DNA of 64,000 nt from Magallana gigas. Lineage: Eukaryota. The notes beneath the pieces are model-generated. The model saw only the letters and a program-made list of their open reading frames with translations. It was not told the origin of the DNA and made no database searches. This document shows positions 4,312-28,922 of the stretch, in pieces. The translations under genes and the position numbers were made by a program. The DNA lies in contig NC_088853.1 of the NCBI RefSeq assembly GCF_963853765.1, positions 51,894,001 through 51,958,000 on the forward strand, read 5' to 3'. Position 1 is the stretch's first letter; each line of letters opens with the position of its first letter.

Positions 4312-7300
4312 CTACTCTACATCACATTCGTCTTCCTTGTTTTTCCTCGCTGCATTATATATAATTGTCTCGGTGTCACATATACCGATCTCACTGTCCT
4401 GTGAGAAGGGCTCCAGACGGCTACGTCTCTTTGGAAGTTCGTACTCCAATCTCTCCCAGGCGCACCGGGAACGCGCAGTGATGTAATTTCCGCTTACCAA
4501 CATCTTTTTTAACCCAGGCTCCAAACTGGTAAAATCTATATCCCCTACAACCACGACTATCACTTTAAATTGGCTATGCTCACGCGCATGCTTGGCCGCC
4601 ACCCGGAAACAGTTCATGTAGTACTGGTTGTTGCCTACATATTTAGTCACAACAAACAGCGCACATTTGCTTTCCTTGATCTTGGAATTTTCAGTTTCAA
4701 GCAGACTGTTGGCAAGGTCGGTAGAGTCAGAAGTCGTTAGTTTGTGGCCAAATTGATTAAGCCTTGGAATCAGTTCTTTATTCGCCCAGTCGGACCCCTT
4801 GACGTCATTGAAATCGTACATAAGAAAAACGTCATAAACGCTGTGTGCTTCGTACTGATGACGAAAGCATTTTATGTTGAGTTTCGTTCCAAAGACAGCT
4901 ATGATGTCACGCCGGAAGTATATACAGGATGCGAACACCAGCAAGGCTGCACACAACAAGATAACTGCAGCCACAATGACGCCCTTATGATCGGAGGATC
5001 TAGCAACAGTTTTTCCTAGACAGTTGAAATATCTCGGTGCAACACGAATCATTTCCTTTCCATTATTTTCACAAAGAATGGATTCGCGGTCGAAAATCCT
5101 GCTCCTGTGTTCGTCGATCCAATTTCGCAGTGCCTTGTTTTTGCATTTACAGACGAAGGCATTGTTTCCGATGAAGATTCTTCGGAGATGCGGTTTATCA
5201 ACAATCAATTCGAGGACCTCGGCATCGAGATATTTAATGTTATTATGACTAATGTCTAACAACATCAAGCTTTTAGAGTTTGGCAAAGAATGTGAGTCAA
5301 ATGCAACTATAGAATTGTTTCTGAGATACAGTTCCTCGAGATAAGTCAAGTTGGCGAAAACGTCACTTGGTAAATCTTCTATTCTATTTTCTGCTAAATC
5401 CAACTTTTTCAAACTTTGGAACGGTCGGAAAAAGTCTTGTGTCAAAAAGCTAACATTACTGCCGTTGATGTACAGTTCTTGAGTTTGGAAACTTCCGGTA
5501 TTAACTTCCTTCGAGAATGTTAAATTTCTTAAGGCGTTGCCGTCAAGGTATATCCGTAAGGCTGAGTGGGGAATCCCTTCCGGTACCTGCGTGACGTCAG
5601 AGCACCTAACCACGGTCGTGTGACTGGCCTCAGAATTTCCAAGACATTGACAATTTTCGGGACAGGAATCTTGCGTTTTACACAAAAAGTCGCCGATCGG
5701 AACGTCTCTGATTTTCATTTTGTAGTGTTTGGGAAGTACAACACAATCGTCCATTTTGTAATGGTTCGTCGGAAAATATTGGTCTCCCATTTCAATTTCC
5801 GGTTCCTTTATCCAACGCATTCCACAGGAACATTCAAAAACGTTGCTTGTGAGATTGAAAACTGGTTTGGAATTGAATAATTTAAATGGTTTGATCTCTT
5901 TTAATCTGTTATGAGAAAGGTCTACTAGACTTAGATTCGGAAAACCCTCGAATGCCTCGACGGAAACATACGAAATGTTACAAAAAGAAAGGAATATGTT
6001 CTGCAAGTTGGGTTCTCTGAATGCGCTCATATCGAGCAGTTCGGGAATCAAATTGTGAATGCGTGTGATAGGATTGTGAGACAAAATTAAATTCTGGAGA
6101 TGGTCAAGGGATTGAAAAGTGGCAAACATCCCGTTAATCTCTTCAATGTTGTTGTGTGATAAGTCAAGTGTAACCAACGAATCGGCACCGCCGAAATAAC
6201 CACGTGATAAATTCAATGAAAGTTGATTGGTTGAAAGGTTCAAATGCTTCAAGTTGGTAAATGTTTGAAAGGCTCTCTCGTTAAATGTCTGAATTCTATT
6301 AATTGACAAAGAAACGAAGGTGAGTTGTGAGAAATTCCCCGAGTCTGAAATGGATAACGTAGTGATATCGTTAGAATCAAGAATTACTTTGTTTACGTAT
6401 GAATTTGAAAGAGAGGCTGGGAAATGTTCCATTCGGTTTTCTTCAGCGTCTAACAGGATCAATGAGTTCGGAAATTTTACATTATCAAGAGACAAGATTT
6501 TGTTCTGAGACAGTAATAAAGACTTGAGATTCGACATGGTTGAAAACACATTATCTTGGAAAGTTGCCAAAAGGTTGTGTCTTAAGTCTAGCACGGTCAG
6601 TTTCCCGAGCCCTTCAAATGCACGATCTTCCAGAAGCTCAAAGTCATTTCGTGAGAGATTCAAAACCTTTAGACTTTCTAATCCTCTAAAGAATCCCGAT
6701 CGTATTTTGATAAAGTTGTTTACACTCAGGTCTAGCTCCTCTAGTGATCGGAGCTGGGAGAACAGTGCTATGGATGAGTTCTTCAGCATGTTGTCAGAGA
6801 TGTCTAGCTTTTTGAGAGAAGACAGTCCGTCGAAAGCTGTGGGGCCAATCTCGTGAATAACGTTCATGGAGAAATCTAGTGTTGTCAAATTCTGCGCTCC
6901 TCTTAGGAAACCTGGTGTTTGCAGTTCCTTTATTAAGTTTTGGGATACTTTCAGAGTCTGTAAAGGAGACGGTTGATCAATGTCGCCAACCAAACTCTTG
7001 ATGTCATTATGGGACAGATCCAACAGCAAGAGATGGGCGCAAACCTCTACTGCTTGGAATTCAAACGATTTAAGCCTGTTCTCGCCCATGTGTAAATATT
7101 GGACGTCCGGTGCATGCTCACAGAGCGTATCCGGTATAGAAGTAAGGTCGTTTTCTGTGAAATCGATGGTGAGTAGTTTTTGCAGGCCGACAAACGCGTC
7201 ACGTTGAATCAAAGTGTTATTGATATTGTTTGATGTCAGGTTTAATGTAACAACGTTAGGTATGCTTCTGAAAGCATTGTGAGGAATAGAGTCAATGAGA

Positions 7301-8869
7301 TTATCACTAAAATCAATGTAAGTCAGGTTCTCCAGTTTCTTTCCACAGTCAAACATGTGGACCGGGAAATTGTGAAAGTTGGTTCCTTGCATTAACAAGA
7401 CCTCAAGTCCGTTCACGTCACAAAGAAACCCCGCATCCAACGTCTTCAAGGGGTTACTACTCAGATCCAGATACTTCAGTGACGTCAGGGATCTGAGGGC
7501 TTCCCCTTCGATGATGGCGATGAGATTGTCCGAGAGGTCCAAGACTTCCAAGTTCCGGAGTGAAGAGAACATCTTGTTCGGGAGTTTCCGGAGCTGGCAG
7601 TAGAAATGGTCGTCAAACTGCCGGAAATGTTGAGGGCTGGCGGCGTTGCTTCCTTTTTTACACATGCAAACGTGTTTTGGAGATGCATAGTATTCCTGTA
7701 AAAAAAAAGAAAGAAATAAAATCCATCAATGCTGTTTGTTTGTTCAATTTTTGTGTTCCATACTTTTTAAAAACAATATGCATCGAACTGAATGCAACCC
7801 TATTTTAAATACAAAATGAATTTGAATACATTTCAGGTCATTTCATACAGTTACTGAAAGCAAGATGGGCATTGGCAATGTGAAGTTTGACAAAATCATT
7901 TGATTAAATGTATAGAGATTGATGTATTAGCACTGGTAGAGTTCAGACAATATTATTTACTCTTATTAAAAGAAATAAAAACTATCAATTGCAAGATCGT
8001 TACTGACCCTCACCCCTTACTGCCATCATTTAGCTGTTTAAAAATACGCGACATTCAATATGAAAATTTTCCTACAAGTAATTCACACTTTCCAATGTCT
8101 TTCTCTGTCGAAATGGAATTTAATAATAATTTGATTATAATATCATTGCGCATGCACGTTAAATTTTCAGTTGTATTATGTTCATATTTGATATTTTAAA
8201 CAATATACAAATACAAATGTACAGTGTACATGTATTAATTATTTGAAATTGATCAAAAAGGATGAAAGCGTAACTTATTTTCTTATAAACCAAGTTTTAA
8301 AAAAAAAATTGTTTAGGAAACAAGAAATTAAAAATATTAGAACCATTTTAACAAGGCCTTGGACTTTCAGTAGTACGTTACTATCAATTTCTTGTGTCAA
8401 AACAAGTTAAAAATGACGCTGGTTTCAAGCGTAATATACACCGATTGCGTAGTCTTAGCTCAAACGCCAGACAAATCTTGTTGATTTCAAAGAGCAATGA
8501 CTAAGTGGCCTACAGTGAAATAGATAGGCCTACGTCATATTGCTGTTTGACACCAACTACCCAACGTCCAAGCTCTTGTAAAAATGGTTCTATGATTCTG
8601 ACCTGTTTTAAACAGTTGACGGCCAGATATGTAACATTTTCTGGATTATACCGCCATTGATCTTCGATTTCCTGGAAACGGTGATTGCGCATGCACCGGA
8701 CCATATCCTCTTGCAGAGAAAGGATGCACTCTCCAAAGATGTTCCGATTGAAGCTGTACGTTCGAAACTTCTCTGGATACCACTCCACCGATACCGTAAA
8801 GTTCCCAGCAAATATGGCGAGGAATTTCCAGAGAAAGACCAGTAGAAATAATTGTCGAACTCCAAACAT
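4312..8869 (-). CDS. Toll-like receptor, multiple-cysteine-cluster (protostome Toll) type, ~1216 aa
   Basis: Exon 1 is 8603-8869 (ATG at 8869, signal peptide MFGVRQLFLLVFLWKFLAIFAG; donor CAG|gtcaga). Exon 2 is 4312-7695 (acceptor tttttacag|GAA, phase 0). It encodes a long LRR array, an internal LRRCT (NVFECSC) plus LRRNT (CPENCQC), more LRRs, a second LRRCT (NAFVCKC), a TM helix (GVIVAAVILLCAALLVFASCIYF) and a TIR domain starting at YDVFLMY. Confidence 0.93.
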
Positions 8870-13312: not shown

Positions 13313-15103
13313 TTATCTACGCGTCGATTTCGGGGAATCCTCCTTAAGCGTCTGTAAATACTTCTTCTGAATGGCGACTTTCACGCAGCCGTCGATCAGC
13401 CTCGGTTTGGGCAGGGTGTCCCTCAGTTTCGTACATCCGGTCGTGGAAGGATCGAACATGATCAGATCGCTACATAGTGTTGCATTGTCGATCTCCCCGC
13501 CCAAGACTATGACGTTTCCCCGGTGCTGTATCACGCCGAAGTGAATCCGTTGGAACGCCGTCAGTCGGCCCACAGTTCGACAGAACGGCTTCTTAGCCGT
13601 ATCTTTCCTGTCTTTTACATACTCCACGACCCGACCGTCGAAGAAAATCAGGAAAATGCGCTTATCACACGTGATGGATTTAGTCAGTTTACACGCCATC
13701 GGTATTTTGGCATCCACTTTCGTCGCTTGTCTTGTGCGCGTCTCGTAACACTGAATAAATGCTGTGTCTTTTCTGTCGTTCTTTTCGCCCCCGAAGATGT
13801 AAATGGACTCGCCCACTACAGCAGCCGAGAAGGAACTAACGGCAATGGGCAGGTCGCCCGCCATCTCCCATTGGTCTTCTTCGATGATGTAGCGTTCGAT
13901 GCTTGATAACATACGATGTCCGTCGTCAAGCTTGTTGTCATAGCCACCAATAGCATAAAGCGCCCCGGTGACAGCGACTATCGCATGGCGGCGTCGTCCA
14001 TACCCCATGCACTCGTTCTGGAGCCACTTATTCTTGCTGCTATCGTACCACAAGAGACACTTTTGCATGGATCCGCCCCCGTTTATATATATGTCGTTTT
14101 GATAGGTGCAGGAGGCGAACTCGATGCCGGGATCATACGGCAGAGCGGCGATGGAGAACCACTCTTTTCTGTAAAAACTGTAACATATCACTCCTAATGA
14201 ACGAACATAAGGGGGCGTGGTCGATTCACACCCACCAAGTAGCACTAGCACTTCCTCCTGACTGGCCGTCAAGCGTAGACACGTTTGCTTCCCTTGTGCC
14301 TCCTGCTGCCGCGCGGGTAAGAGTTTGAAAGACTTTGCCTCGTTGATGAATTTCATACACGCGAGGTCTTCTTTTAGAAACTCGTGTTTTTCTTCTAGAT
14401 TCACCAAGTATTCCGGCGTCAGAAAGGCAAGCCGAATTTGTTCGAACAAGATCCCGCAGCTCTCCTTCCGTTTCTCGACATCTCGTTCGATCCACTTGAT
14501 GACGAGATCACAGAGCTGATCCTCGCTGTCGATGTCTAGCGTATCCTCCTTAATAATGGACGCCACCTCACGGCCGTCCAACTCCCAGAATTCCTCATTT
14601 GTGATGATTTCCTTAAAGTTCCGGGCAATCAGTTGAACGGATTTCTCCGTCAGTGTGTGACAATCGTGCAAGACGGACAATCGCCAGACCTTCAGACAAT
14701 TTTCGTTGGTAAGATGCGGGTGGAGGAACTCTTCAATGATTCCCTGCAAAGCTTTGATTTGCAACACCGCCGCGATGTGTAGCAACTCCACGGCGTTGTC
14801 AGTCGTCATCACTTCCTCCGCTTTACCGGTGTACATAAAACTCAAAACGATTTCGAACAGATCCGGGTCCATTTCCGGAAACGTCACTTGACCACTAATG
14901 CTTTCGCGCATGCCTGAGCTAAACATGGCGTCAAAGTATGGCGACATTGCTGCTAGGATGCTTTTATGACAATTGAAGGTTTTCTCGCCCACCTCGATTG
15001 TGACGTCAGAATGGTCACCCGTGGTCCACAGCCTCTTCATGGAATCGCACAAGAGGTCCAGGTAGATTTTGTTTAACACCATCTCAGGTGACTTTGCTGC
15101 CAT
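13313..15103 (-). CDS. Kelch-like protein (BTB-BACK-Kelch), 596 aa, intronless CDS
   Basis: BTB 'HSDVTIEVGEKTFNCHKSILAAMSPYFDAMFSSGMRES', BACK 'ENCLKVWRLSVLHDC...EEFWEL' and kelch repeats 'RRRHAIVAVTGALYAIGGYD' and 'SFSAAVVGESIYIFGG'. An acceptor (tttttctatag) 17 nt upstream of the ATG implies a non-coding first exon. Confidence 0.92.
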   Translation of the reverse strand: MAAKSPEMVLNKIYLDLLCDSMKRLWTTGDHSDVTIEVGEKTFNCHKSILAAMSPYFDAMFSSGMRESISGQVTFPEMDPDLFEIVLSFMYTGKAEEVMTTDNAVELLHIAAVLQIKALQGIIEEFLHPHLTNENCLKVWRLSVLHDCHTLTEKSVQLIARNFKEIITNEEFWELDGREVASIIKEDTLDIDSEDQLCDLVIKWIERDVEKRKESCGILFEQIRLAFLTPEYLVNLEEKHEFLKEDLACMKFINEAKSFKLLPARQQEAQGKQTCLRLTASQEEVLVLLGGCESTTPPYVRSLGVICYSFYRKEWFSIAALPYDPGIEFASCTYQNDIYINGGGSMQKCLLWYDSSKNKWLQNECMGYGRRRHAIVAVTGALYAIGGYDNKLDDGHRMLSSIERYIIEEDQWEMAGDLPIAVSSFSAAVVGESIYIFGGEKNDRKDTAFIQCYETRTRQATKVDAKIPMACKLTKSITCDKRIFLIFFDGRVVEYVKDRKDTAKKPFCRTVGRLTAFQRIHFGVIQHRGNVIVLGGEIDNATLCSDLIMFDPSTTGCTKLRDTLPKPRLIDGCVKVAIQKKYLQTLKEDSPKSTRR

Positions 15104-19481: not shown

Positions 19482-22050
19482 ATTAGTCTGTATTACAAGA
19501 TATTATATTTATTCACTTAAAACTACCTGCAGAAACATGTTTTACTTATTGCCCGTCTAAACTTTAGGCTGTACTTCATCTTGGTAATAAAAAAAATATA
19601 TGACAATATAAAACCGAACAAAAAATTATTAAAAACTTGAAAACTTGACCATCACAATTCATACCTCCTTTAACCTGTTCGATTGTTTATCAGTCGCGAT
19701 CAGACTATAAAACCGGCTGTGTCAAGCAGGCACACGGTACATAAATCAATACACGACACACTCTCAATGATATTCTCGTACACACCTGAGAATGTATGGC
19801 GAATTTATGGAGGGGTCCTTAAAGTGTTGAGGCGGAGCAAGGGATTGATTAGAGAGCAGGCCATTTTACTGACTATGCACATAAACTGAACATTGTTTAA
19901 GAGAGAAACGGTCAACATTTTTTTTTTGTATTCTCAACTGTTCAATGTCGAATTAAAAAGCATGAATGTCAACAAAGTCACAGCTGAAAACTTAATCAGC
20001 GTTATGAGCGTACGACATTCCCTATACCGGTATGACATGCAGTCATTATGGTATGAAATAAACACAGGTGATTCATACATTTTGCACTTCCGATATGTAC
20101 AGTACATTAGTCCCGATTGTCAGAAAGATGTCAACAAAAAAGATACGAGCAAATGACAATTACTGATACATACACGAAACTCAACATTGACAAGTCAAAA
20201 ATACTTACCATCACCAGCTAGAAATTCACATCATGGTATTAACATGTTTCATCCCACTTCCTGCTCAAACAGAAACACACATGAAATCGACACTGTCACA
20301 ACGTGTGCAAGTTGTGTGTGTATATATCGCCTCTCTTCTCTCTCTCGTTGACACGGGCTATTTTTAGACCGCCTGTTCGAGGACCGCCGAAGGGGAGGAA
20401 ATAATACACGCGATTTAATGTACGTAAAGTTTTGTTGAAGTTTTTATTTAAATTGTCCGCTAGACCGTGAAAACAGCTTGTATAAGGCATTTAAACGGCG
20501 GACAAAAGACATATAAGTCGTGCATTTCCTTGTAACAATTACACAGATATTATAATGTATACCAACACCCAAATTAATTATAAAAGTACAAGACTTGAGT
20601 GTAGAAATAAAACACTTTTTAAACAACTGTTTTATGGCGAATCGGAACCAATTTGTTAACATTCAAAAGCACTTAGTTCTACTTAATTACAACATTCGTA
20701 CAAATTAATGTAACTGCATATTAATTCTAAACGAATTTGAAATTTCAAAAAGTATATTGAAGAATTTTATTTGCTTCATTTTTTATATCTTAAAAAAAAT
20801 GCACAAAGGCAACTTTTAAAATTTGAAAAACAGAGCCCAAGGCGTTTAATTATACACCTCTAAATGTTATTTTATACACTAGTGTACCGAGAAAACACGG
20901 TCAACTTCTCTTAACATAACACTGTAGTTGCGCTTGCAGAATTAAAAGAAAAAAAAACAACTTTAGAGACGTTGTGGTTTGCCTTATCATAAGTACATGC
21001 AGTGTATCACCTTCAGCTACCAAATATAGTAATTAGAATGTTCTTGATAAGATGAATATAACGACAAATAAAGTGAAATAACACTTCAAATTCTTTTGAT
21101 TTACCCCGATACCAGACCCTAATAATGTATAGGGCATTTTATAAATATTTTCTGATGATATTGTTCAAATAATTTCTCTTCCTAATGCAAAATATACAAA
21201 ACAAGAAATTAATCAACATAATTTATTCAAGTTTTAGAGAAATAAAAGACAAAAGATTCAGTGTAGCCTATATATAAATATTTATACCAATGGGTACATA
21301 TGAACTAAATATTATATTACATTACAATTTAGACAAAAAAACAAAAAAGAAAAAAACCCCAGAGAAAACCAACAAACAAACAAACAAACAAACAAATTGT
21401 GAAGTCACAATAAAACAAACATCTAGTATATAGACTGACCATTCACTTGTAAAGTCAATCATAAATAATATAAAAAATTATGAAACATGTGAATATGTAA
21501 CAGTTCTCTCCTTCTAAAGGGATTTTTGAGATATAATTGTATTCACTTTGAAAATAAAAATGGGCGGGCGTAAGACAGCTCCATCGGCTGCCAATCCAGG
21601 ATCCGCTCCTATTGAGTTCGATCAGATGCAAAAGGTAACATAAGTGGAAAGCTAGCCTTTGCTGGCGAAGGTAAGATAACCTCTCCCAATTGTAATTAGT
21701 TTCAAACATAACCCAATTTAGTTTAAGGAATAATGTACATTAATGAGTCGGACACTTCAAAAAAAGATCGACCATCATCAAAAAATTAGAATAAGGTGCA
21801 TGGACTTTTTTATTGACTCTAATGAAACTAACATGCATGTTTTCATGCACATTGTTCATTAACAGGGTCAATTTCTAGCGAAAAGAAAATGGAACCGATG
21901 CAAGAGAATAGGGAGAGGAGACTGACTCCTGCCCTAAAATTGAACATGCATTGTGGAAAATACAGTTGTGGAAACAGGCGTTTTTTCTATGATATACATG
22001 AAAAAAAAAACATCAAGGAAAGTATTTGAGCAGAAAAATGTGTCATCTTG

Positions 22051-22739
22051 TCACGTTTTATTCCGTACATTCACTTTAAAAGGTGAACCACGAACTTCAA
22101 TATCACCCCAAGTAACACTTATGACGTAATCACCAGGTTCATTGGCTTCATAAGAGCAGACGATCATAGTTTTGTCTTCAGCGTGTTTCTCCATCTTGAC
22201 GTTAAATGACCCTAAAAGGAAAAAAATCTAAAAACGTCTGTTACACTTTAATAATATTGATTGTAAATTAATGAAAAAAGAATAGACGGCAAAATGGCAT
22301 CGTAATGATTTCTATGAGCCCGGATGACTTTTATCTATGATTCATCGTTTCCAAACCTTTTGGGCCTCGGATATTTACTCCCAGCCTTCCTGGTCCGGCA
22401 CCCTGTGTTTTAACGTTAAATGTCGGATCGAATTCTCCCAGTATCCCCTCTGGTTCGATGCCCGGCCCATGGACCTCGATCTTGTCAGGGTCGGATTCTT
22501 TACTCGTACCAGCAGGGGCCTGAAATACTTATTATAAATAAGAAACTCATTATTATATTAGCTTGGTCGTTTCGAATAAAATGTTAACTATATAGATTTT
22601 AGACTACAACTAGTCAGCGAGTGAAGTCTCCAGTTTATAAAATTCATTAAAATAATGCATTGGCGACATACATTCACTTTTAATTTATTAGCCAATGGTT
22701 AATCTCTGTCTGTTTGTCTGTCTGTTCGTCCATCCATCC

Positions 22740-22790
<51 letters not shown>

Positions 22791-22985
22791 GCTTATTAAA
22801 TCATCTATAAAATTATCTAAAACACTAAGTGCCATACAAGCGTCAATCTTTGGGATGATGGAATGAGTTGTCTCCGCTTTGTTCGCCCTGTGACGTTCTA
22901 TACACTTGTCATGCAGACAGACTCCGCACTTCAGACACGTCCAATCAACAGCCAGTTCACCGGAAGTACACTCTGCACATGACAT
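22051..22985 (-). CDS. Small B-box zinc finger plus single filamin-type Ig repeat protein (~159 aa)
   Basis: Exon 22838-22985 encodes the B-box (CAEC-x10-CLKC-x4-H-x2-C-x3-H-x8-H; donor T|gtatgg). Exon 22357-22527 encodes DPDKIEVHGPGIEPEG...GAGPGRLGVNIRGPK. Exon 22051-22211 encodes GSFNVKMEK...EPGDYVISVTWGDIEVRGSPFKVNV then a stop. The filamin exons are clear. Joining them to the B-box in frame needs the AAG acceptor ending at 22528. Confidence 0.68.
22741..22787. repeat. (CT)n microsatellite in intron 1 of the B-box/filamin gene
   Basis: Direct read. Confidence 0.95.
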
Positions 22986-24863
22986 AATTTCTGTTCACTT
23001 CCGATTATGTCTCATCTAAATTGTTTTTTAGTGTAGCTGAACCTATAAACAAATACATGTATGTATTAACTATGTATTGACTGCATATTGAGCTAATTAA
23101 ATTGTCCGAATTTAGTAAACTCTCATATTTCAAAAGGACTCAAACCAAGTGGCCCTGATGCACCTAGCCATCGCTATGCGTGAAATAAGGAGTAGTGGTT
23201 TTTTGACTGATAGTTATCACACGCGCCTGTATACCTGGTGACTTTATATTGTACTTAGCTGGTAGTTGTTTGTGTCGAATTACTAAATAAAGTCTTACTT
23301 TAAAATGGTCAAACGCCAATCCTTACCTCTTCCCCAATTATCGTAATGAAAAATACGTCGATGTGACATTGGTCAAAGAAACTCACGATGCTAGCATATT
23401 GTTAATTAATCTATTCGACTCTAGTCGTGTAGTCTTTAAACACAGAATGTTCTGACTACTATACACTTACCTTTTGAGTCTGTTTTTACAATGTTACAGT
23501 CATACGATTCTCATCAAAATGATTCCAAGTATTGGTCTGTGTATCTAGTGCAGACTTGTATCTACTGATGACATTCCCAACACATCTCGTTAATGAATTA
23601 TGTCACTGTAATGCCTCCTTTCATTTTCATTCTTCAGTTAAAATGTTTATTTTACGTACGTGGGACCCTAAACTCTTCGTGAAACATCAATTCATGTTCA
23701 GCCAAGCAGAGCGAAGACTGCAAAAATTTAGAACAAGTGTGCAGAGGCAAGCCAATTTACTATCAACACATGTACCCAAATATTCAGGAAGTTTGACAAC
23801 AGCATGTTTTGAAGACATTGCTGATTGAGGAGTTTTTTTAATGATCATGCACTAACGCAGAAAATGATTGAAGCAGATATTTTATGAACTATACACTTCT
23901 CAACATACCACATGAAGGAACAAACGTTGTGATGAGATCAGTTTGCTTTTCGACGCGATTGTTTGAACAAGTTTGATTTAAAGTTTCCAAACATTGCGTC
24001 TGTTGACAAATAGCGATCAATAAACTAAAATCCTAGACACAATATGTATCCAGGATGGTATATTATTAAATGTCCCTCTTTCTTTTTCTTTTTTTTTTTA
24101 AATGTTTGTATAGATATAGAGATTCATAGATTTCTTCGGTAAGAGCGACAACTGTAACTTGAAAATTTAACCATTTTTGTTTATTGGGCAATTTTCTTTT
24201 TAATTTACTAAAATTCAAATTTTGTTGCGTGAGATCTGTTAAAAACTTGTGAAATATATCAATGTATTTGAGACAGTCGACGGAATTTTCTATAGTGCAT
24301 GTATCAAATAATCGACATTCAGTGTACCGTTAGCTGATAATGCTGATACATAAAATATCGTATCTTTTTAACAAAGCTAAATTGGTAATGCTTTACTTCA
24401 TTTCTAATTTAAATTTTAAAAAAGTTAAAGATTTAAATACAAAAAGCATTAAACGAAATATCGTTTAGTGAATTGTGTATAAAATACATTCATTTGGTTA
24501 AAAGGAAATAAAAGTAGAAAAAGAGAATAAAACATCGATACAATAAAATTCCGAAGGCTTTTATATAGAAAAGCAAATCTCTATCTACTGTTGCTTGTAG
24601 TAAATGTGTTACACGTCGAGCTACATGTTCAAATTCATACACTCTTTAACACATTCTCGTACACTGTATAAATACACTCACAAAGTCACAAAATTCACAT
24701 AAAGAGACAATAGAATTCATCAAAATAACCAAGAAAAATAATTGGCATCCCGACACAACCCCCAATGCCCCCATAGAATACCCCCTCCCGAAATGAAATA
24801 TATCAAAAATATAATCATGCCTATTCATTTTAATATTTTAAGAATTCTAGAATCTATCAAAAA

Positions 24864-25087
24864 TACTGTAAACCAACTTTTATTTGCGACGACTTTATTT
24901 CGCGATACACTTCCGATAAACTGGTTCGTGACGACTAAAGTTTGCGACCAAGCCTAATCCAGACCCGTCTTGTTGTAACAACCATCCTACTACGACTGGT
25001 TCGCGGTGAGAAATATTCGCGACGACGAGTCCCTCGCGAACCTCGCAAAAAAAATTTTCACACGCGAATAAAAATTGGTTTACAGTA
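24864..25087. mobile_element. MITE, TACTGTAAACC...GGTTTACAGTA family
   Basis: TIRs tactgtaaaccaacttttatt / aataaaaattggtttacagta; CGCGA-rich interior; related copies at 57553-57773 and 61973-62192. Confidence 0.82.
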
Positions 25088-25237
25088 TACAATCATTCAC
25101 CACTGATGACACAACTTCAATAAATTAATGAATAAATTAAATACAACTATAAGAATTCACGTATTACACTATAATCTGGCATACAACATGTGTGACACTT
25201 TTCGATGGCGGTTCTGTATAAATGATATTTTGAGTGC

Positions 25238-27701
25238 TCAGTTTATTAAGTAGAACATGGTCAGCTGTTGCCCGGATCTCCTAATGTTGGCTGTGACCCA
25301 TAGCCTTCTTCCGGTTTGATCGAATCCGATCCCGACCGGACTACCGACATTAACCCGAGCGGAGCGGACAACTCGACCACGTGATCCGTCTGACGTCACC
25401 TGGAAGATCGTGTTCGATTTGCAGTCGCACACGTAAATGTTATCCTCGAAATCCAAAGCTAACCCAGCCGGCTCTCTCAGAGCTCGGTCCTGATATCTGA
25501 TAAAACATATAAATGAAAAAAGACATGCATTTGTTTAGGAGTAAAGTGTCATAAAATGCAAGGAAAATAACATAGTATTTCTCATTTGTATGTAACATTT
25601 CACATTCAGTTCTAATGTGGCATCAAAATTAGTAATTTGTTAAGAAACGTTTTACTTTAAAAGTACAACTATTTCAAACTCTTATTGATAGTATTCTGAT
25701 AATATCTTTGGACAAGAATAATATTCAGTAACTGTTATTTGGTGAATGACTGAAATTTTGATGTATGTCTCAGTTTCGCTCCTTCCAAATCTAATTCATC
25801 AATTTAATACACTTACATTTATAAGTTTGTTCTGTGAATACCTACCTAAATATTTCTTCTCCTTCAGATGACCTACACACGATAGCGTCTCCATCACGAT
25901 GATAGATCTGTTGGTTATCACGTGACACCACCACAGGGGCAGTGTACGTAAAGCTTTCGAGCGTCGGAATCGTCTGGATCTCAACCCCGTCCTCCCCGAT
26001 AATTTTGATACAGTCCCCAAACGACACGACAATCTTGTCTCCCATGGACGCCACGCCTTCCGGAGCCGAGTGTGTGTTGATAGCGCCCAGCAACTTAAGT
26101 CCCTCATTGTTGATACGATAATGCGCTATCTTGCAGACGTGTGGTAAGGTAACGATGATTTCGTCATCATTGTTTGCTGCCGTGACGTCACAGGGCGCCG
26201 ATTCGAGCGGGAATTCCATGACAGGGTAATAGACATCCCTCTTGAACTTCTTCAGCTTGTGGTTGTTGTAGTCCGCCATAAGGAAGTGGACTCCGTCCGC
26301 CATGAACATTCCTCCAGTGAACCAGACGATCCTCCGCTCGTTAGGAGTCGATCCGTTGTAGTCTTTTTCTTTGATCAGCTTCAGGCTGAATGGATCCGGA
26401 TGTCCCATGATCGTGTGCGGGATTTTCCCGGACATGACTGTGTACGTTTCCAGACTCCGTGAGGCGATATCTATGACTGGAGCGGTACGTTCCAAGCGCT
26501 GTTCTCCATTGACGTGATTATTTTCCTCCACGTTGGATCGTTGAACTCGGAGCTTCCCAAGTGACGTGATTTTCTCAGCCGTTGCCAAAAAGTGTTCATT
26601 GAATTCAAATCTGTAGTCCAAGTCTTCGGCCTTTTCTTTATCCACTGTCAGAATCTCGCGATGAAACCCAATTTGATGACGCAGTCTTTCTGACGTTATA
26701 AACAACATCGAGCTACTTCCGTGTTTTGCCACTGCCTCCAAGTACTTCAGATCGAGATCCATTGCAAGTTTCGAGCTTTGAAGAACAGACATTCGATGTT
26801 CGAGTGCCTTCGTTTCTTTGATGTGGAATTTTTCGAAACGACGCAGCGATTCCTCTCTGAGAAGTTCGAGGCGCTCGATGGCCTTCTGAGTCAAAAGCTC
26901 GATTTTCTCGGTCAGCTCGGCGTACTTGAGATTCAGTAACGTCGTGGCCTGCGATTTGTCGGCGATTTGTTCGTCTGCTCTGTGTACGATTTCAGTCATG
27001 GCGTCTACGACTTCCGCAAGCTCCCCCGTGCTCTTGATGTCTGTAACTAACTCGTCAATCATTTTGATTCCGTGACATTCTCGGTGATTCGTAGCAAAAC
27101 ACACTACGCAACAAAGCTTCCGGTGCCCCGGACAAAACAACTCGACAGTTTTGCCCTTGTGTTCTGTGCATGTTTCGTCAGTTTTCGGTTCTAGTCGGCG
27201 ATTTCCGGGTTTATTTCGGGCCTCTTCAAGAGGAATGATGCGATGGCCCGTTATCTGCTTGATCTTACGATGTATTCCTTTGCAAAACTCGCAGAGAGGT
27301 TCGAAACAATCCCTACACCAATGTTTCGCAGCCGATGTCTTTCCCTCCCTTTTACACGGCGTACATACCTGCGTCTCGCTGTTCAACGGAACTCCCTCCG
27401 CAAGGGATGTTATTAGACTATTATCCGGAAGTTGTCCTGTCCAAGTCTCTGGATTAGACTCGGGAACGGAAATGGAAGTCGGGATGTGGCAAATTGGACA
27501 TGTGAATTTCCCATCGAGCAGGTCTTTCTTTTCCTTGGACGTGATGTACGTATTGAGACATCCCTCACAGAAATTGTGAAGACAGTCCAGTTGTTTGGGA
27601 TCGCTGTAGTGACGTAAGCAGAGAGGGCACGTGAAAACGTCAATATCTGGATCCGGGTCTTTTTTATTCTTTTTTAATGACGTCACAGATCCGTTGTTCA
27701 T
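25238..27701 (-). CDS. TRIM-like E3 ligase (RING, two B-boxes, coiled coil, NHL-like beta-propeller); TRIM2/3/71-like expanded family
   Basis: Exon 25846-27701 (ATG at 27701) and exon 25238-25496, joined by a phase-2 GT-AG intron (TTT AG|A TAT). RING CPLC...CLHNFCEGC...CPIC; B-box1 CTPC...CRDC...LCEFCKGIH; B-box2 CTEH...FCPGHRKLCCVVC; NHL-like 'EPAGLALDFEDNIYVCDCKSNTIFQV'. Confidence 0.92.
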
Positions 27702-28922
27702 GTCCAACGCTGCAGCCTCTTTCTAAAAGGCTCCGATTGTAAAAAAGGAAATGGCTTTCGAACCTGTTTAGAACAGAACTTCCATAGCTTCAATTAACCT
27801 TGAGATATTTTGCAATTTCTCCTTTAAGACAATTCAGTAATGAAAACTGCAAGCATGTGTATTTCGTTGTCCAAACTGGAACCGTGAATACACAAAAAAA
27901 AAAGTTGGGGCACGTACTTATTATGTCGGGGGCAATCTTACTTAAATGAATACCTTTAAATACAATTAATATTAAAAAAAGCACTGTCCGCTATTTTTGT
28001 GAATAATTTATGGTTTTTAATCCAAATAAACCTTATATTTATCGATCCTGCGCAGTATTGCTTTAATACCCTTTCTATTTACTAATTCCGAATTCGTTTC
28101 GCCATTAGTAACCATTTGTAACAATATTTTTCCCCCATCGTGGGCCTTTTTTTAAATTATTTGTCCGCGGCTTTAAACAAAATCTTTGAGAAAAGACAAT
28201 AAGCACGACCGACATTGAATATCTATCTTTTTTGAACACCGGGCCATTAAAGACTTAGTGTCTTATCGAGAACTATAAAAGTACACCCTGGGAAATAAAA
28301 TCTAACTACCCCCTCATGATTTTAAAGAATGCAATATGCATGTTCATGTACTTAGAAAATGTGTTATCATTTTACCAAAACATATTATCAGTTGTTTACC
28401 ATGTATTTTTTTTTAGATAAGGACAATGTATATTGAATCACATATATAGAGCCAAGTAGTTCATTATAATGATGATATTTTCATTTCTTTATTATTTATG
28501 TATATCGAAAATGAATTGTCATGCACGGATCAAAAGGAGGGTGGAGGGCTGGGGAGTCCCCCCCCCCCCCGGAATTTTTTTTTGGATCCGCTCAGGATTG
28601 TGTATTTTTTTTTTTTACTATGATGCAATGGCAAATGTGCCACGGATACTTTACATGCTTCCTAATAGTAAAGGTTCTTTACACTGAAGGGCCGTTGAAT
28701 GGCTTATTTAATTCATTTTTCTGCAAATTACGCTGCAGTGTTACTAACAGAGTCTTTTGGTGTGATAAGCAATGTAAGAACGGTAACTCTAACAACTGTG
28801 TGTGCAAGTCAGAAGTTCAAACATTACATTCATTGATTTTTAAAAAGAAGAAAACTTGCAATTTGTTTCCTGGTAAAATATTTACGAAATTTTGATTTAA
28901 CTGTTATCCAAATTACATGTAA

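What the first reader, a model, noticed from the sequence alone, without database searches (positions are those of the whole stretch)
22051..22985. Hidden mini-gene fusing one B-box to one filamin repeat, with no RING, coiled coil or NHL
Seen: two short exons missed by the ORF track encode a complete filamin Ig repeat (…HGPGIEPEG…GAGPGRLGVNIRGPKGSF…EPGDYVISVTW…GSPFKV). They lie 310 bp downstream of an exon encoding a B-box1 with His at the fifth ligand position. From memory, the repeat resembles the last repeat of jitterbug-type invertebrate filamins (GAGAGQLTVRVRGPKGAF…EPGDY) more than TRIM-type filamin domains. Known: B-box and filamin normally co-occur only within full TRIMs (TRIM2/3/45/71). 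Inference: a ~159-aa exon-shuffled adaptor, possibly a dominant-negative TRIM regulator or an actin-cytoskeleton linker. I know of no described protein with this architecture.
Basis: partly seen in the sequence, partly recalled or inferred. Interest (0 to 1): 0.7.

Follow-up and report, generated by a model that had tools for sequence, protein, structure and literature searches.

The report
Small oyster B-box plus filamin gene
This is a real, spliced and conserved oyster gene for a 159-residue protein that joins one B-box1-type zinc finger to one filamin repeat; databases already hold it under the misleading name "filamin-B", and no searched paper describes it.

Summary
RNA contigs from three runs show the predicted minus-strand junctions 22838/22527 and 22357/22211, plus a 5'UTR exon. 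An in-frame TGA lies four codons before the ATG at 22985, and the stop is at 22053-22051, so the product is 159 aa and not part of a longer gene.

It is not hidden. The three exon translations equal RefSeq XP_011436526.3, "filamin-B [Magallana gigas]".

Proteins of 159-162 aa with the same three coding exons occur in C. virginica, Saccostrea, Ostrea and Pinctada. All eight zinc ligands are kept, and His is the fifth. In Saccostrea the gene has the same neighbours as here, a TRIM-like gene and a BTB-Kelch gene. dN/dS is 0.16.

The N-terminal finger fails Pfam's cut-offs, but it matches B-box1 by profile (96%) and by fold (TRIM28 and PML B-box1).

The filamin repeat is filamin-type, not TRIM-type. 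It shares its intron position and phase with the last repeat of three filamin genes of this genome that also carry a calponin-homology (CH) domain.

Function is inferred only: a non-catalytic two-module adaptor. The scan had no other note on it. This is a new variant of known kinds, of moderate interest.

The parts
23471..23767 (-). Exon A, non-coding 5' exon (5'UTR). It holds only short upstream ORFs that end inside the exon. Its donor is gtaagt at 23470.
   Evidence: RNA contigs cover 23469-23666 and join 23469/23471 to 23040/23042 in X1, X4 and X5, plus one raw read of X21. Transcript contig L036 aligns back to 23767. Sequence read.
22838..23042 (-). Exon B: the end of the 5'UTR, an in-frame TGA at 22997-22995, the ATG at 22985, codons 1-49 and the first base of codon 50 (phase 1).
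   Evidence: joints 23040/23469 and 22527/22838.
22863..22979 (-). B-box1-type zinc finger, from ligand C3 to H41. The ligands are C3, C6, C17, C20, H25, C28, H32 and H41.
   Evidence: All eight ligands are invariant in six homologues. hhalign gives 96.4% against Pfam-certified B-boxes. The AF2 model has pLDDT 83.6. The top fold hits are PML B1-box and TRIM28 B-box1.
22528..22837 (-). Intron 1, 310 nt, GT..AG. It contains a (GA)n microsatellite at about 22699-22797.
   Evidence: skips 310; repeat 22699-22797 skipped by the tool.
22357..22527 (-). Exon C, 171 nt, symmetric phase 1-1. It codes for the linker and the first half of the filamin repeat, up to RGPK.
22212..22356 (-). Intron 2, 145 nt, phase 1, in the Gly codon after GPK. 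The last repeat of three CH-filamin genes on contig C8 has an intron at the same position and phase.
21296..22211 (-). Exon D: the second half of the filamin repeat, the stop TGA at 22053-22051, and a 3'UTR of at least 755 nt.
   Evidence: Contig L036 aligns to 22213-21296.
25842..27707 (-). Upstream neighbour and a separate transcription unit: a single-exon TRIM-like gene (RING, two B-box matches), 621 aa. Its 3'UTR has an intron at 25497-25845. A TRIM-like gene sits next to the small gene in the other oysters too.
   Evidence: (joint 25496/25846; no depth at 23901-24700).
13313..15103 (-). Downstream neighbour by open reading frame: a 596-aa ORF. By eye it looks like a BTB-Kelch protein, but Pfam was not run on it here. 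Saccostrea has a 596-aa BTB-BACK-Kelch gene at the same relative place.

Best explanation
This is a real protein-coding gene of the Pacific oyster, already modelled in RefSeq as 'filamin-B'. It has four exons, three of them coding.

The 159-aa product has two independently folding modules joined by a short flexible linker of about 10-15 residues:
- an N-terminal cross-brace zinc finger of B-box1 type, with His in place of the fifth Cys;
- one filamin Ig repeat.

The gene is a chimera of two families. The repeat came with its internal phase-1 intron from the terminal repeat of a filamin gene that also has a calponin-homology (CH) domain, possibly of jitterbug type. The finger belongs to the greatly expanded B-box/TRIM-like family. 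The gene arose before oysters (Ostreida) and pearl oysters (Pterioida) split, and has been kept under purifying selection since.

Inferred, not shown: it has no catalytic part and works as a small adaptor. The filamin Ig would dock a partner on its C-D strand face, by beta-strand addition or by pairing with another filamin repeat. The B-box1 would give a second surface for self-association or for binding B-box/TRIM-like proteins, as PML and TRIM28 B-box1 domains do.
For: Transcription and splicing:
- All joints are GT..AG on the minus strand. A 701-nt contig spans all four exons.
- The raw stranded reads of X21 all have the first mate on the + strand, which fits a minus-strand RNA if the library is of the usual stranded kind.
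- RNA runs hold 0.40-0.48 of the words, against 0.73-0.88 in the runs that look like DNA.

Complete ORF:
- An in-frame TGA lies four codons before the ATG, and exon A has only short closed ORFs.

Database identity:
- P0030, XP_011436526.3, equals the window's exon translations.

Conservation:
- Homologues of 159-162 aa occur in C. virginica, Saccostrea echinata, Ostrea edulis and Pinctada imbricata, plus an unnamed sample.
- Saccostrea, Ostrea and Pinctada have the same three coding exons.
- Saccostrea has the same neighbours in the same order, TRIM-like then the small gene then a 596-aa BTB-Kelch gene. Ostrea and Pinctada also have a TRIM-like gene beside it.
- dN/dS is 0.16 at dS 0.5. It is 0.22 for the B-box exon and 0.12-0.15 for the filamin exons.

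B-box:
- All eight ligands are invariant.
- hhalign gives probability 96.4%.
- Foldseek's top five hits are B-box1 domains.
- VIA-align's top hit is TRIM28 B-box1, Z 5.9, rmsd 1.6 A over 42 residues.
- A profile search of PDB sequences ranks the PML, MID1 and TRIM28 B-box1 domains in five of the top six places.
- The nearest non-orthologous proteins in 1.84 billion are tandem arrays of B-box1-like fingers.

Filamin:
- PF00630 scores 59.7 bits against a cut-off of 26.9.
- Fold hits have probability 1.0.
- The intron position and phase are shared with three terminal repeats on contig C8.

Two modules:
- The linker, residues 49-58, has pLDDT under 50.
Against: - No functional datum of any kind exists. 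No partners, localisation, zinc content or oligomeric state were measured.
- Pfam does not call the finger a B-box. All hits are below cut-off, and C1_1, ArfGap and a PHD variant score about as well.
- Fold-search scores are modest for a 50-residue model (Foldseek E 0.02, Z 5.9).
- The alignment A5 used for hhalign was picked by its similarity to the query, which inflates that probability.
- Homology modelling in C. elegans suggests that the last repeat of the jitterbug-like FLN-2 lacks the dimerisation signature (PMC3143143). Pairing with a filamin repeat is therefore uncertain.
- The high conservation of the C-D region is also typical of filamin repeats in general.
- Between the window and the allele P0002 there are 7 non-synonymous but only 2 synonymous differences. 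The counts are small.
Confidence: 0.72

Rival explanations
1. Dominant-negative or decoy regulator of TRIM-like proteins. The lone B-box1 would insert into B-box-mediated assemblies of the many RING-less and RING-bearing B-box proteins, for example the conserved neighbour. It would block or redirect them, and the filamin repeat would bring a different cargo.
For: - A TRIM-like gene lies next to the small gene in four genera.
- The B-box1 fold is closest to PML and TRIM28 B-box1. Both of those mediate higher-order assembly; the entry title of 6imq says as much, and the rest is established knowledge.
- The genome holds very many B-box proteins, with at least 35 matches.
Against: - The finger is only 36% identical to the neighbour's B-box1, at E 0.058. 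That is no closer than to B-boxes on another contig, at 35-39%.
- There is no evidence of co-expression or binding.
- Adjacency may be plain conserved gene order.
Confidence: 0.12
2. Modulator of the parent filamin. The repeat was copied from the terminal repeat of a CH-filamin. It would pair with that repeat, capping or bridging filamin ends and linking the actin network to B-box partners.
For: - The closest repeats in this genome are the last repeats of three CH-filamin genes, with the same intron position and phase.
- In vertebrate and Dictyostelium filamins the last repeat is the dimerisation module (PMC3143143 and the bioRxiv Jbug paper).
- Filamin C domain 24 is among the best sequence and fold hits.
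Against: - Identity to those repeats is only 37-48%, so the copy is old and has diverged.
- The last repeat of the jitterbug-like FLN-2 is predicted not to dimerise.
- Other, non-terminal filamin A/B/C repeats score as well or better.
Confidence: 0.12
3. The N-terminal finger is not a B-box but another small two-zinc or treble-clef domain, such as C1-like, PHD-like or ZnF-UBP-like.
For: - Pfam C1_1 matches all six homologues, best E 3.5e-5. The PHD variant reaches 7e-5.
- zf-B_box matches only one of six.
- The HDAC6 ZnF-UBP tops the profile search of PDB sequences, E 0.006.
- The C-x2-C..C-x2-C-x4-H-x2-C core also fits the C1 pattern (established pattern, from memory).
Against: - All of these hits are below the curated cut-offs.
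- The finger starts at residue 3, so it has no room for the C1 domain's N-terminal His, and its spacing does not fit the C1 domain's final Cys.
- Profile-profile comparison, both fold searches and the nearest non-orthologous proteins all point to B-box1.
Confidence: 0.08
4. A transcribed but functionless chimera or pseudogene, or a fragment of a longer gene.
For: - One contig skips the B-box exon (X5, joint 22527/23471), and intron-retaining gene calls exist (P0001, P0005, P0032).
- An old model, K1PT47, fused it to the Kelch gene.
Against: - The ORF, exon structure and ligands are kept across two bivalve orders, with dN/dS 0.16.
- There is an upstream in-frame stop and a conserved stop codon.
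- No RNA links it to the TRIM gene: depth is zero at 23901-24700.
Confidence: 0.04

Closest known systems
TRIM45, and TRIM2/3/71 (class VII/X TRIMs with a filamin domain)
   Same: They combine B-box and filamin-type Ig domains in one chain.
   Different: - The oyster protein has no RING, no B-box2, no coiled coil and no NHL.
- Its Ig repeat is far closer to filamin A/B/C repeats (E 1e-12 to 1e-8) than to the filamin domains of TRIM45 (0.014), TRIM3 (0.28) or TRIM71 (0.47).
- It is therefore not a trimmed TRIM45-like gene but an independent fusion.
Filamins with CH domains (cheerio/FLN-1 type and jitterbug/FLN-2 type), terminal repeat
   Same: - The repeat passes PF00630.
- Its closest relatives in this genome are the last repeats of three CH-filamin genes on contig C8, with the same phase-1 intron after GP[KR].
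- It is 46-50% identical to the C-terminal repeats of arthropod and nematode filamins.
   Different: - It has one repeat only, no CH actin-binding domain, and no C-terminal tail after the repeat.
- The RefSeq and UniProt names 'filamin-A/B/C' are therefore misnomers.
- Whether the parent gene is the jitterbug orthologue could not be settled.
B-box1 domains of PML (TRIM19), TRIM28 and MID1
   Same: The ligand spacing and the beta-beta-alpha-beta fold agree. These are the best fold and PDB-sequence matches.
   Different: - The fifth ligand is His rather than Cys, conserved in all homologues.
- It stands alone at the very N-terminus, with no RING before it and no B-box2 after it.
- It falls below Pfam's zf-B_box cut-off.
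RING-less B-box / coiled-coil / NHL-like proteins of the same genome (cluster at C6:20.8-24.8 Mb)
   Same: The protein starts directly with a B-box1-type finger of the same C-terminal spacing, C-x2-C-x4-[CH]-x2-C-x3-H-x8-H. These are the closest fingers in this genome, at 35-39% identity.
   Different: Those proteins are 530-590 aa, single-exon, and have a second B-box, a coiled coil and a beta-propeller. None has a filamin repeat.

Membership tests
Filamin/ABP280 repeat (Pfam PF00630) | Profile match above Pfam's gathering score over the whole repeat | tested here: met
   59.7 bits against a cut-off of 26.9, profile positions 2-93 of 93, on P0002. The two window exons match the two halves.
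Filamin/ABP280 repeat (Pfam PF00630) | Seven-stranded Ig-like beta-sandwich | tested here: met
   The AF2 model has seven strands between residues 67 and 155. Foldseek gives probability 1.0 to filamin A/B/C repeats, 66 hits at E<=0.001.
Filamin proteins proper (actin cross-linkers; the RefSeq name of this gene) | N-terminal actin-binding domain of CH domains | tested here: not met
   No CH match in the 159-aa protein. The ORF is closed upstream by an in-frame TGA.
Filamin proteins proper (actin cross-linkers; the RefSeq name of this gene) | Rod of many tandem Ig repeats | tested here: not met
   One repeat only.
B-box type 1 zinc finger | Eight Cys/His ligands with the spacing C-x2-C-x6-17-C-x2-C-x4-8-C-x2-3-[CH]-x3-4-H-x5-10-H (pattern from established knowledge) | tested here: met
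   The finger reads C3-x2-C6-x10-C17-x2-C20-x4-H25-x2-C28-x3-H32-x8-H41, invariant in six homologues. The only departure is His for Cys at ligand 5.
B-box type 1 zinc finger | Match to the curated B-box profile (PF00643 or related) above cut-off | tested here: not met
   zf-B_box matches 1 of 6 homologues at E 0.001, and ANCHR-like_BBOX 4 of 6 with best E 9.7e-5. All are under the gathering scores, and C1_1 scores similarly.
B-box type 1 zinc finger | Homology to certified B-boxes by profile-profile comparison | tested here: met
   hhalign gives probability 96.4%, E 1.4e-9, against first B-boxes of proteins of this genome that pass PF00643 at E 1e-11 to 1e-12. Caveat: that set was chosen by its similarity to the query.
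B-box type 1 zinc finger | RING-like cross-brace fold (two strands, a helix, a third strand) | tested here: met
   The AF2 model has pLDDT 83.6, with strands at 15-17, 22-24 and 43-45 and a helix at 26-35. The top hits are PML B1-box, TRIM28 B-box1 and CONSTANS-type B-boxes.
B-box type 1 zinc finger | Binds two zinc ions | not testable with these tools
   Needs metal analysis or a solved structure.
TRIM / RBCC family | RING, then B-box(es), then a coiled coil, in that order | tested here: not met
   No RING and no coiled coil. Only about 15 residues lie between the finger and the Ig repeat.
TRIM-type filamin domain (as in TRIM45, TRIM2/3/71) | Closer in sequence to TRIM filamin domains than to filamin repeats | tested here: not met
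   TRIM45 E 0.014, TRIM3 0.28 and TRIM71 0.47, against 1e-12 to 1e-8 for single filamin A/B/C repeats.
Jitterbug/FLN-2-type filamin as source of the repeat | The parent gene has three CH domains and is orthologous to Drosophila jbug | tested here: inconclusive
   Each C8 gene showed one CH match upstream, but counts are lower bounds. The arthropod cluster is named only 'filamin-A', 3888 aa. No Drosophila sequence was on hand.

The most novel reading that the evidence does not exclude
This is a lineage-restricted, naturally minimal 'half-TRIM'. A stand-alone B-box1 is fused to a filamin end-repeat and acts as a stoichiometric regulator. It would cap or bridge the ends of a CH-filamin, or poison B-box-driven assemblies of the expanded TRIM-like immune repertoire. 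That would link cytoskeletal mechanics to B-box protein condensates in oysters.
Probability: 0.15. Interest if true: 0.55.

Novelty: new variant of a known kind. Interest (0 to 1): 0.35.

Why it matters
- It corrects an annotation. A conserved 159-aa protein is called 'filamin-A/B/C(-like)' in at least four of the five named species. It has no actin-binding domain, and its N-terminal B-box1 finger goes unseen by Pfam.
- It is a clean, datable example of domain shuffling with the intron still in place. A symmetric phase 1-1 exon and its partner, taken from the end of a filamin gene, were joined to a B-box exon.
- It is a compact natural construct for asking what a lone B-box1 and a lone filamin repeat can do. 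This bears on how the very large bivalve B-box/TRIM-like repertoire is wired.
- It opens no long-standing question, and its function is unknown.

Tried and rejected
- **Pfam on the finger.** Nothing passed a cut-off, whether run on the window exon, on the full proteins or on six homologues.
- **ESM Atlas feature search.** No usable hit.
- **Look-up of the C. virginica protein's contig.** Not on record.
- **A further 5' exon.** The loose end at 23653 suggested one. Rejected: it is an allelic mismatch of collinear sequence, and L036 runs collinear to 23767.
- **B-box copied from the neighbouring TRIM.** Rejected: 36% identity at E 0.058, no closer than copies on another contig.
- **Read-through from the TRIM gene.** Rejected: that gene's RNA ends near 24880 after a 3'UTR intron, and depth is zero at 23901-24700.
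- **B-box or TRIM exons upstream of the C8 filamin repeats.** None found within 10 kb; only more filamin repeats.
- **Counting CH domains to call the C8 genes jitterbug-type.** Inconclusive.
- **Paper searches.** No paper holds B-box, filamin and Crassostrea together, and none holds the accession numbers. A wider search gave only general TRIM reviews.
- **Findings search.** It returned only this same stretch.
- **Joined spliced model left out.** The exons were searched one by one by reference. Full-length work used database proteins that the tools returned (P0002, P0030).

Full report
**1. What is in the sequence**

On the minus strand, 22985-22838 codes for 49 residues starting at an ATG. The piece 22527-22357 codes for a linker plus the first half of a filamin repeat. 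The piece 22211-22051 codes for the second half and a stop.

The two halves match Pfam PF00630 at profile positions 2-48 (E 6e-4) and 52-93 (E 6e-8). The splice sites are canonical. Exon C is 171 nt long and symmetric in phase 1-1. An in-frame TGA at 22997-22995 lies four codons before the ATG.

**2. Is it transcribed and spliced as claimed?**

Yes.

- RNA runs hold 0.40-0.48 of the sampled words of 21900-23100. Six runs of unrecorded type, probably DNA, hold 0.73-0.88. That is what exons without introns would give.
- Laid on 21701-27700, contigs of three runs show the joints 22527/22838 (310 nt skipped) and 22210/22356. They also show a joint 23040/23469 to a further 5' exon. All are CT..AC on the plus strand, so GT..AG on the minus strand.
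- One 701-nt contig spans all four exons.
- The raw polyA reads of X21 are few, and all have the first mate on the + strand. That fits a minus-strand RNA if the library is of the usual stranded kind.
- The 5' exon (23767-23471) holds only short closed ORFs, so the CDS starts at 22985.
- One contig of X5 joins 23471 directly to 22527 and skips the B-box exon. This is a minor or non-coding form.
- The upstream TRIM-like gene (27707-25842) has its own 3'UTR intron (25497-25845). Its RNA ends near 24880, and depth is zero from 23901 to 24700. The two are separate transcription units.

**3. Is it hidden or new to databases?**

No.

I searched the natural open frame 22985-22683 by reference, scoring its residues 1-49. 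That returned 159-aa proteins from transcript assemblies.

Their cluster contains XP_011436526.3, 'filamin-B [Magallana gigas]', and UniProt A0A8W8P5X7, 'Filamin-C'. The sequence of P0030 equals the three exon translations plus L50 and G107 from the split codons.

An older model, K1PT47 (271 aa), wrongly fuses the gene to the downstream Kelch gene.

Full-length analyses used these database proteins.

**4. Conservation**

- A profile search limited to proteins of 87-278 aa found full-length homologues in C. virginica (159 aa, 65% identity), Saccostrea echinata (161 aa), Ostrea edulis (161 aa) and Pinctada imbricata (162 aa, 40%).
- A genomic contig of an unnamed sample carries the same B-box exon followed by a filamin half-exon.
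- Saccostrea, Ostrea and Pinctada have three coding exons cut at the same places.
- Saccostrea shows a TRIM-like gene, then the small gene, then a 596-aa BTB-Kelch gene. That is the order of the open frames in this window. Ostrea and Pinctada also have a TRIM-like neighbour.
- Ostrea belongs to Ostreida and Pinctada to Pterioida, so the gene predates that split.
- Against the transcript of another Crassostrea-like species, dN/dS is 0.16 at dS 0.5. It is 0.22 for the B-box exon and 0.12-0.15 for the filamin exons. This was computed exon by exon on whole codons.

**5. The N-terminal finger**

- C3, C6, C17, C20, H25, C28, H32 and H41 are invariant in six homologues. C23 is not conserved.
- Pfam gives only sub-threshold hits: C1_1, ArfGap, a PHD variant, ANCHR-like B-box and zf-B_box.
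- The closest fingers in this genome, at 35-39% identity, open RING-less proteins of 530-590 aa. These pass PF00643 at E 1e-11 to 1e-12.
- Profile-profile comparison with them gives probability 96.4%. H25 falls on their fifth Cys.
- The AF2 model of the finger alone has pLDDT 83.6 and a beta-beta-alpha-beta layout.
- Foldseek's top five hits are the PML B1-box and TRIM28 B-box1.
- The search independent of Foldseek puts TRIM28 B-box1 first, at Z 5.9 and rmsd 1.6 A over 42 residues.
- A profile search of PDB sequences gives the PML, MID1 and TRIM28 B-box1 domains in five of the top six places.
- In 1.84 billion representative proteins, the only significant non-orthologous hits that look real are short proteins made of tandem B-box1-like fingers.

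I accept 'B-box1-type, His at ligand 5'. The profile cut-off is not met, and zinc binding is untested.

**6. The filamin repeat**

- It passes PF00630 (59.7 bits) and folds as a seven-strand sandwich.
- It is filamin-type, not TRIM-type.
- In this genome its best matches are the last repeats of three genes on contig C8. These repeats are each split into two exons, and more filamin repeats and a CH domain lie upstream.
- In all three, the intron sits in the codon after GP[KR], in phase 1, exactly as in the small gene.
So do tick filamin C-termini.
- Whether that gene is the jitterbug orthologue could not be shown.

**7. How it most likely works**

The following points are shown by the data:
- There are two folded modules joined by a low-confidence linker.
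- Pfam finds no catalytic domain.
- Both modules are under constraint.

The rest is inferred. The protein would be a non-enzymatic adaptor.

The filamin C-D strand region is among the best conserved parts. That is the face filamin repeats use for peptide docking and for dimerisation (PMC3143143).

B-box1 domains of PML and TRIM28 drive higher-order assembly. This rests on the titles of the matched PDB entries and on established knowledge.

Two special cases remain open and untested: regulation of TRIM-like assemblies, and capping or bridging of the parent filamin.

**8. Verdict**

- The claim that the gene is hidden and absent from databases is wrong.
- The proposed function is untested.
- No searched paper describes the protein.
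- This is a new variant of known kinds, of moderate interest.

Noticed in passing
window 24860-25090: A short stretch with very high RNA depth (up to 82 in X5) and many different loose ends on both sides in all runs. It behaves like a dispersed repeat or transposon fragment lying in the 3'UTR region of the TRIM-like gene.
   Followed up: no
window 25497-25845 (minus strand): The single-exon TRIM-like gene (27707-25842) has a spliced intron in its 3'UTR starting right after its stop codon (joint 25496/25846 in X1 and X5). An intron there can mark a transcript for nonsense-mediated decay.
   Followed up: partly
window 4312-7665 (minus strand): A 1117-aa single open frame. By eye it has many leucine-rich repeats, a transmembrane stretch and a TIR-like tail, so it looks Toll-like-receptor-like. 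Pinctada has an LRR gene near its homologue of the small gene.
   Followed up: no
P0031 (UniProt K1PT47), covering window 22985-22051 and 13313-15103: An old 271-aa gene model fuses the B-box-filamin gene to the C-terminus of the downstream Kelch gene. This is an annotation artefact.
   Followed up: partly
P0022, P0024, P0025: Short proteins (154-284 aa) made only of three or four tandem B-box1-like fingers, each ending in an H-x-[ILV]-[ILV]-P-[LF]-type motif. Their organisms are unknown. They are another RING-less B-box architecture.
   Followed up: no
P0021: A 55-aa copy of the B-box exon whose changes would fit C-to-T conversion, for example His to Tyr and Ala to Val. It is probably an assembly of bisulfite-treated reads and not a real variant.
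   Followed up: no
window CDS against L036: Between the window and the allele P0002 there are 7 non-synonymous but only 2 synonymous differences. This contrasts with dN/dS of 0.16 between species. The counts are too small to interpret.
   Followed up: partly
G000:C6:20.8-24.8 Mb (loci L002-L012): A large cluster of near-identical single-exon genes for RING-less proteins with B-box, coiled coil and an NHL-like propeller, 530-590 aa each. More than 20 matches lie within 4 Mb.
   Followed up: partly
window 22699-22797: A (GA)n microsatellite inside intron 1. In the unspliced frame it reads as a run of alternating Arg and Glu, which is why the ORF list shows a 101-aa frame from the same ATG.
   Followed up: yes
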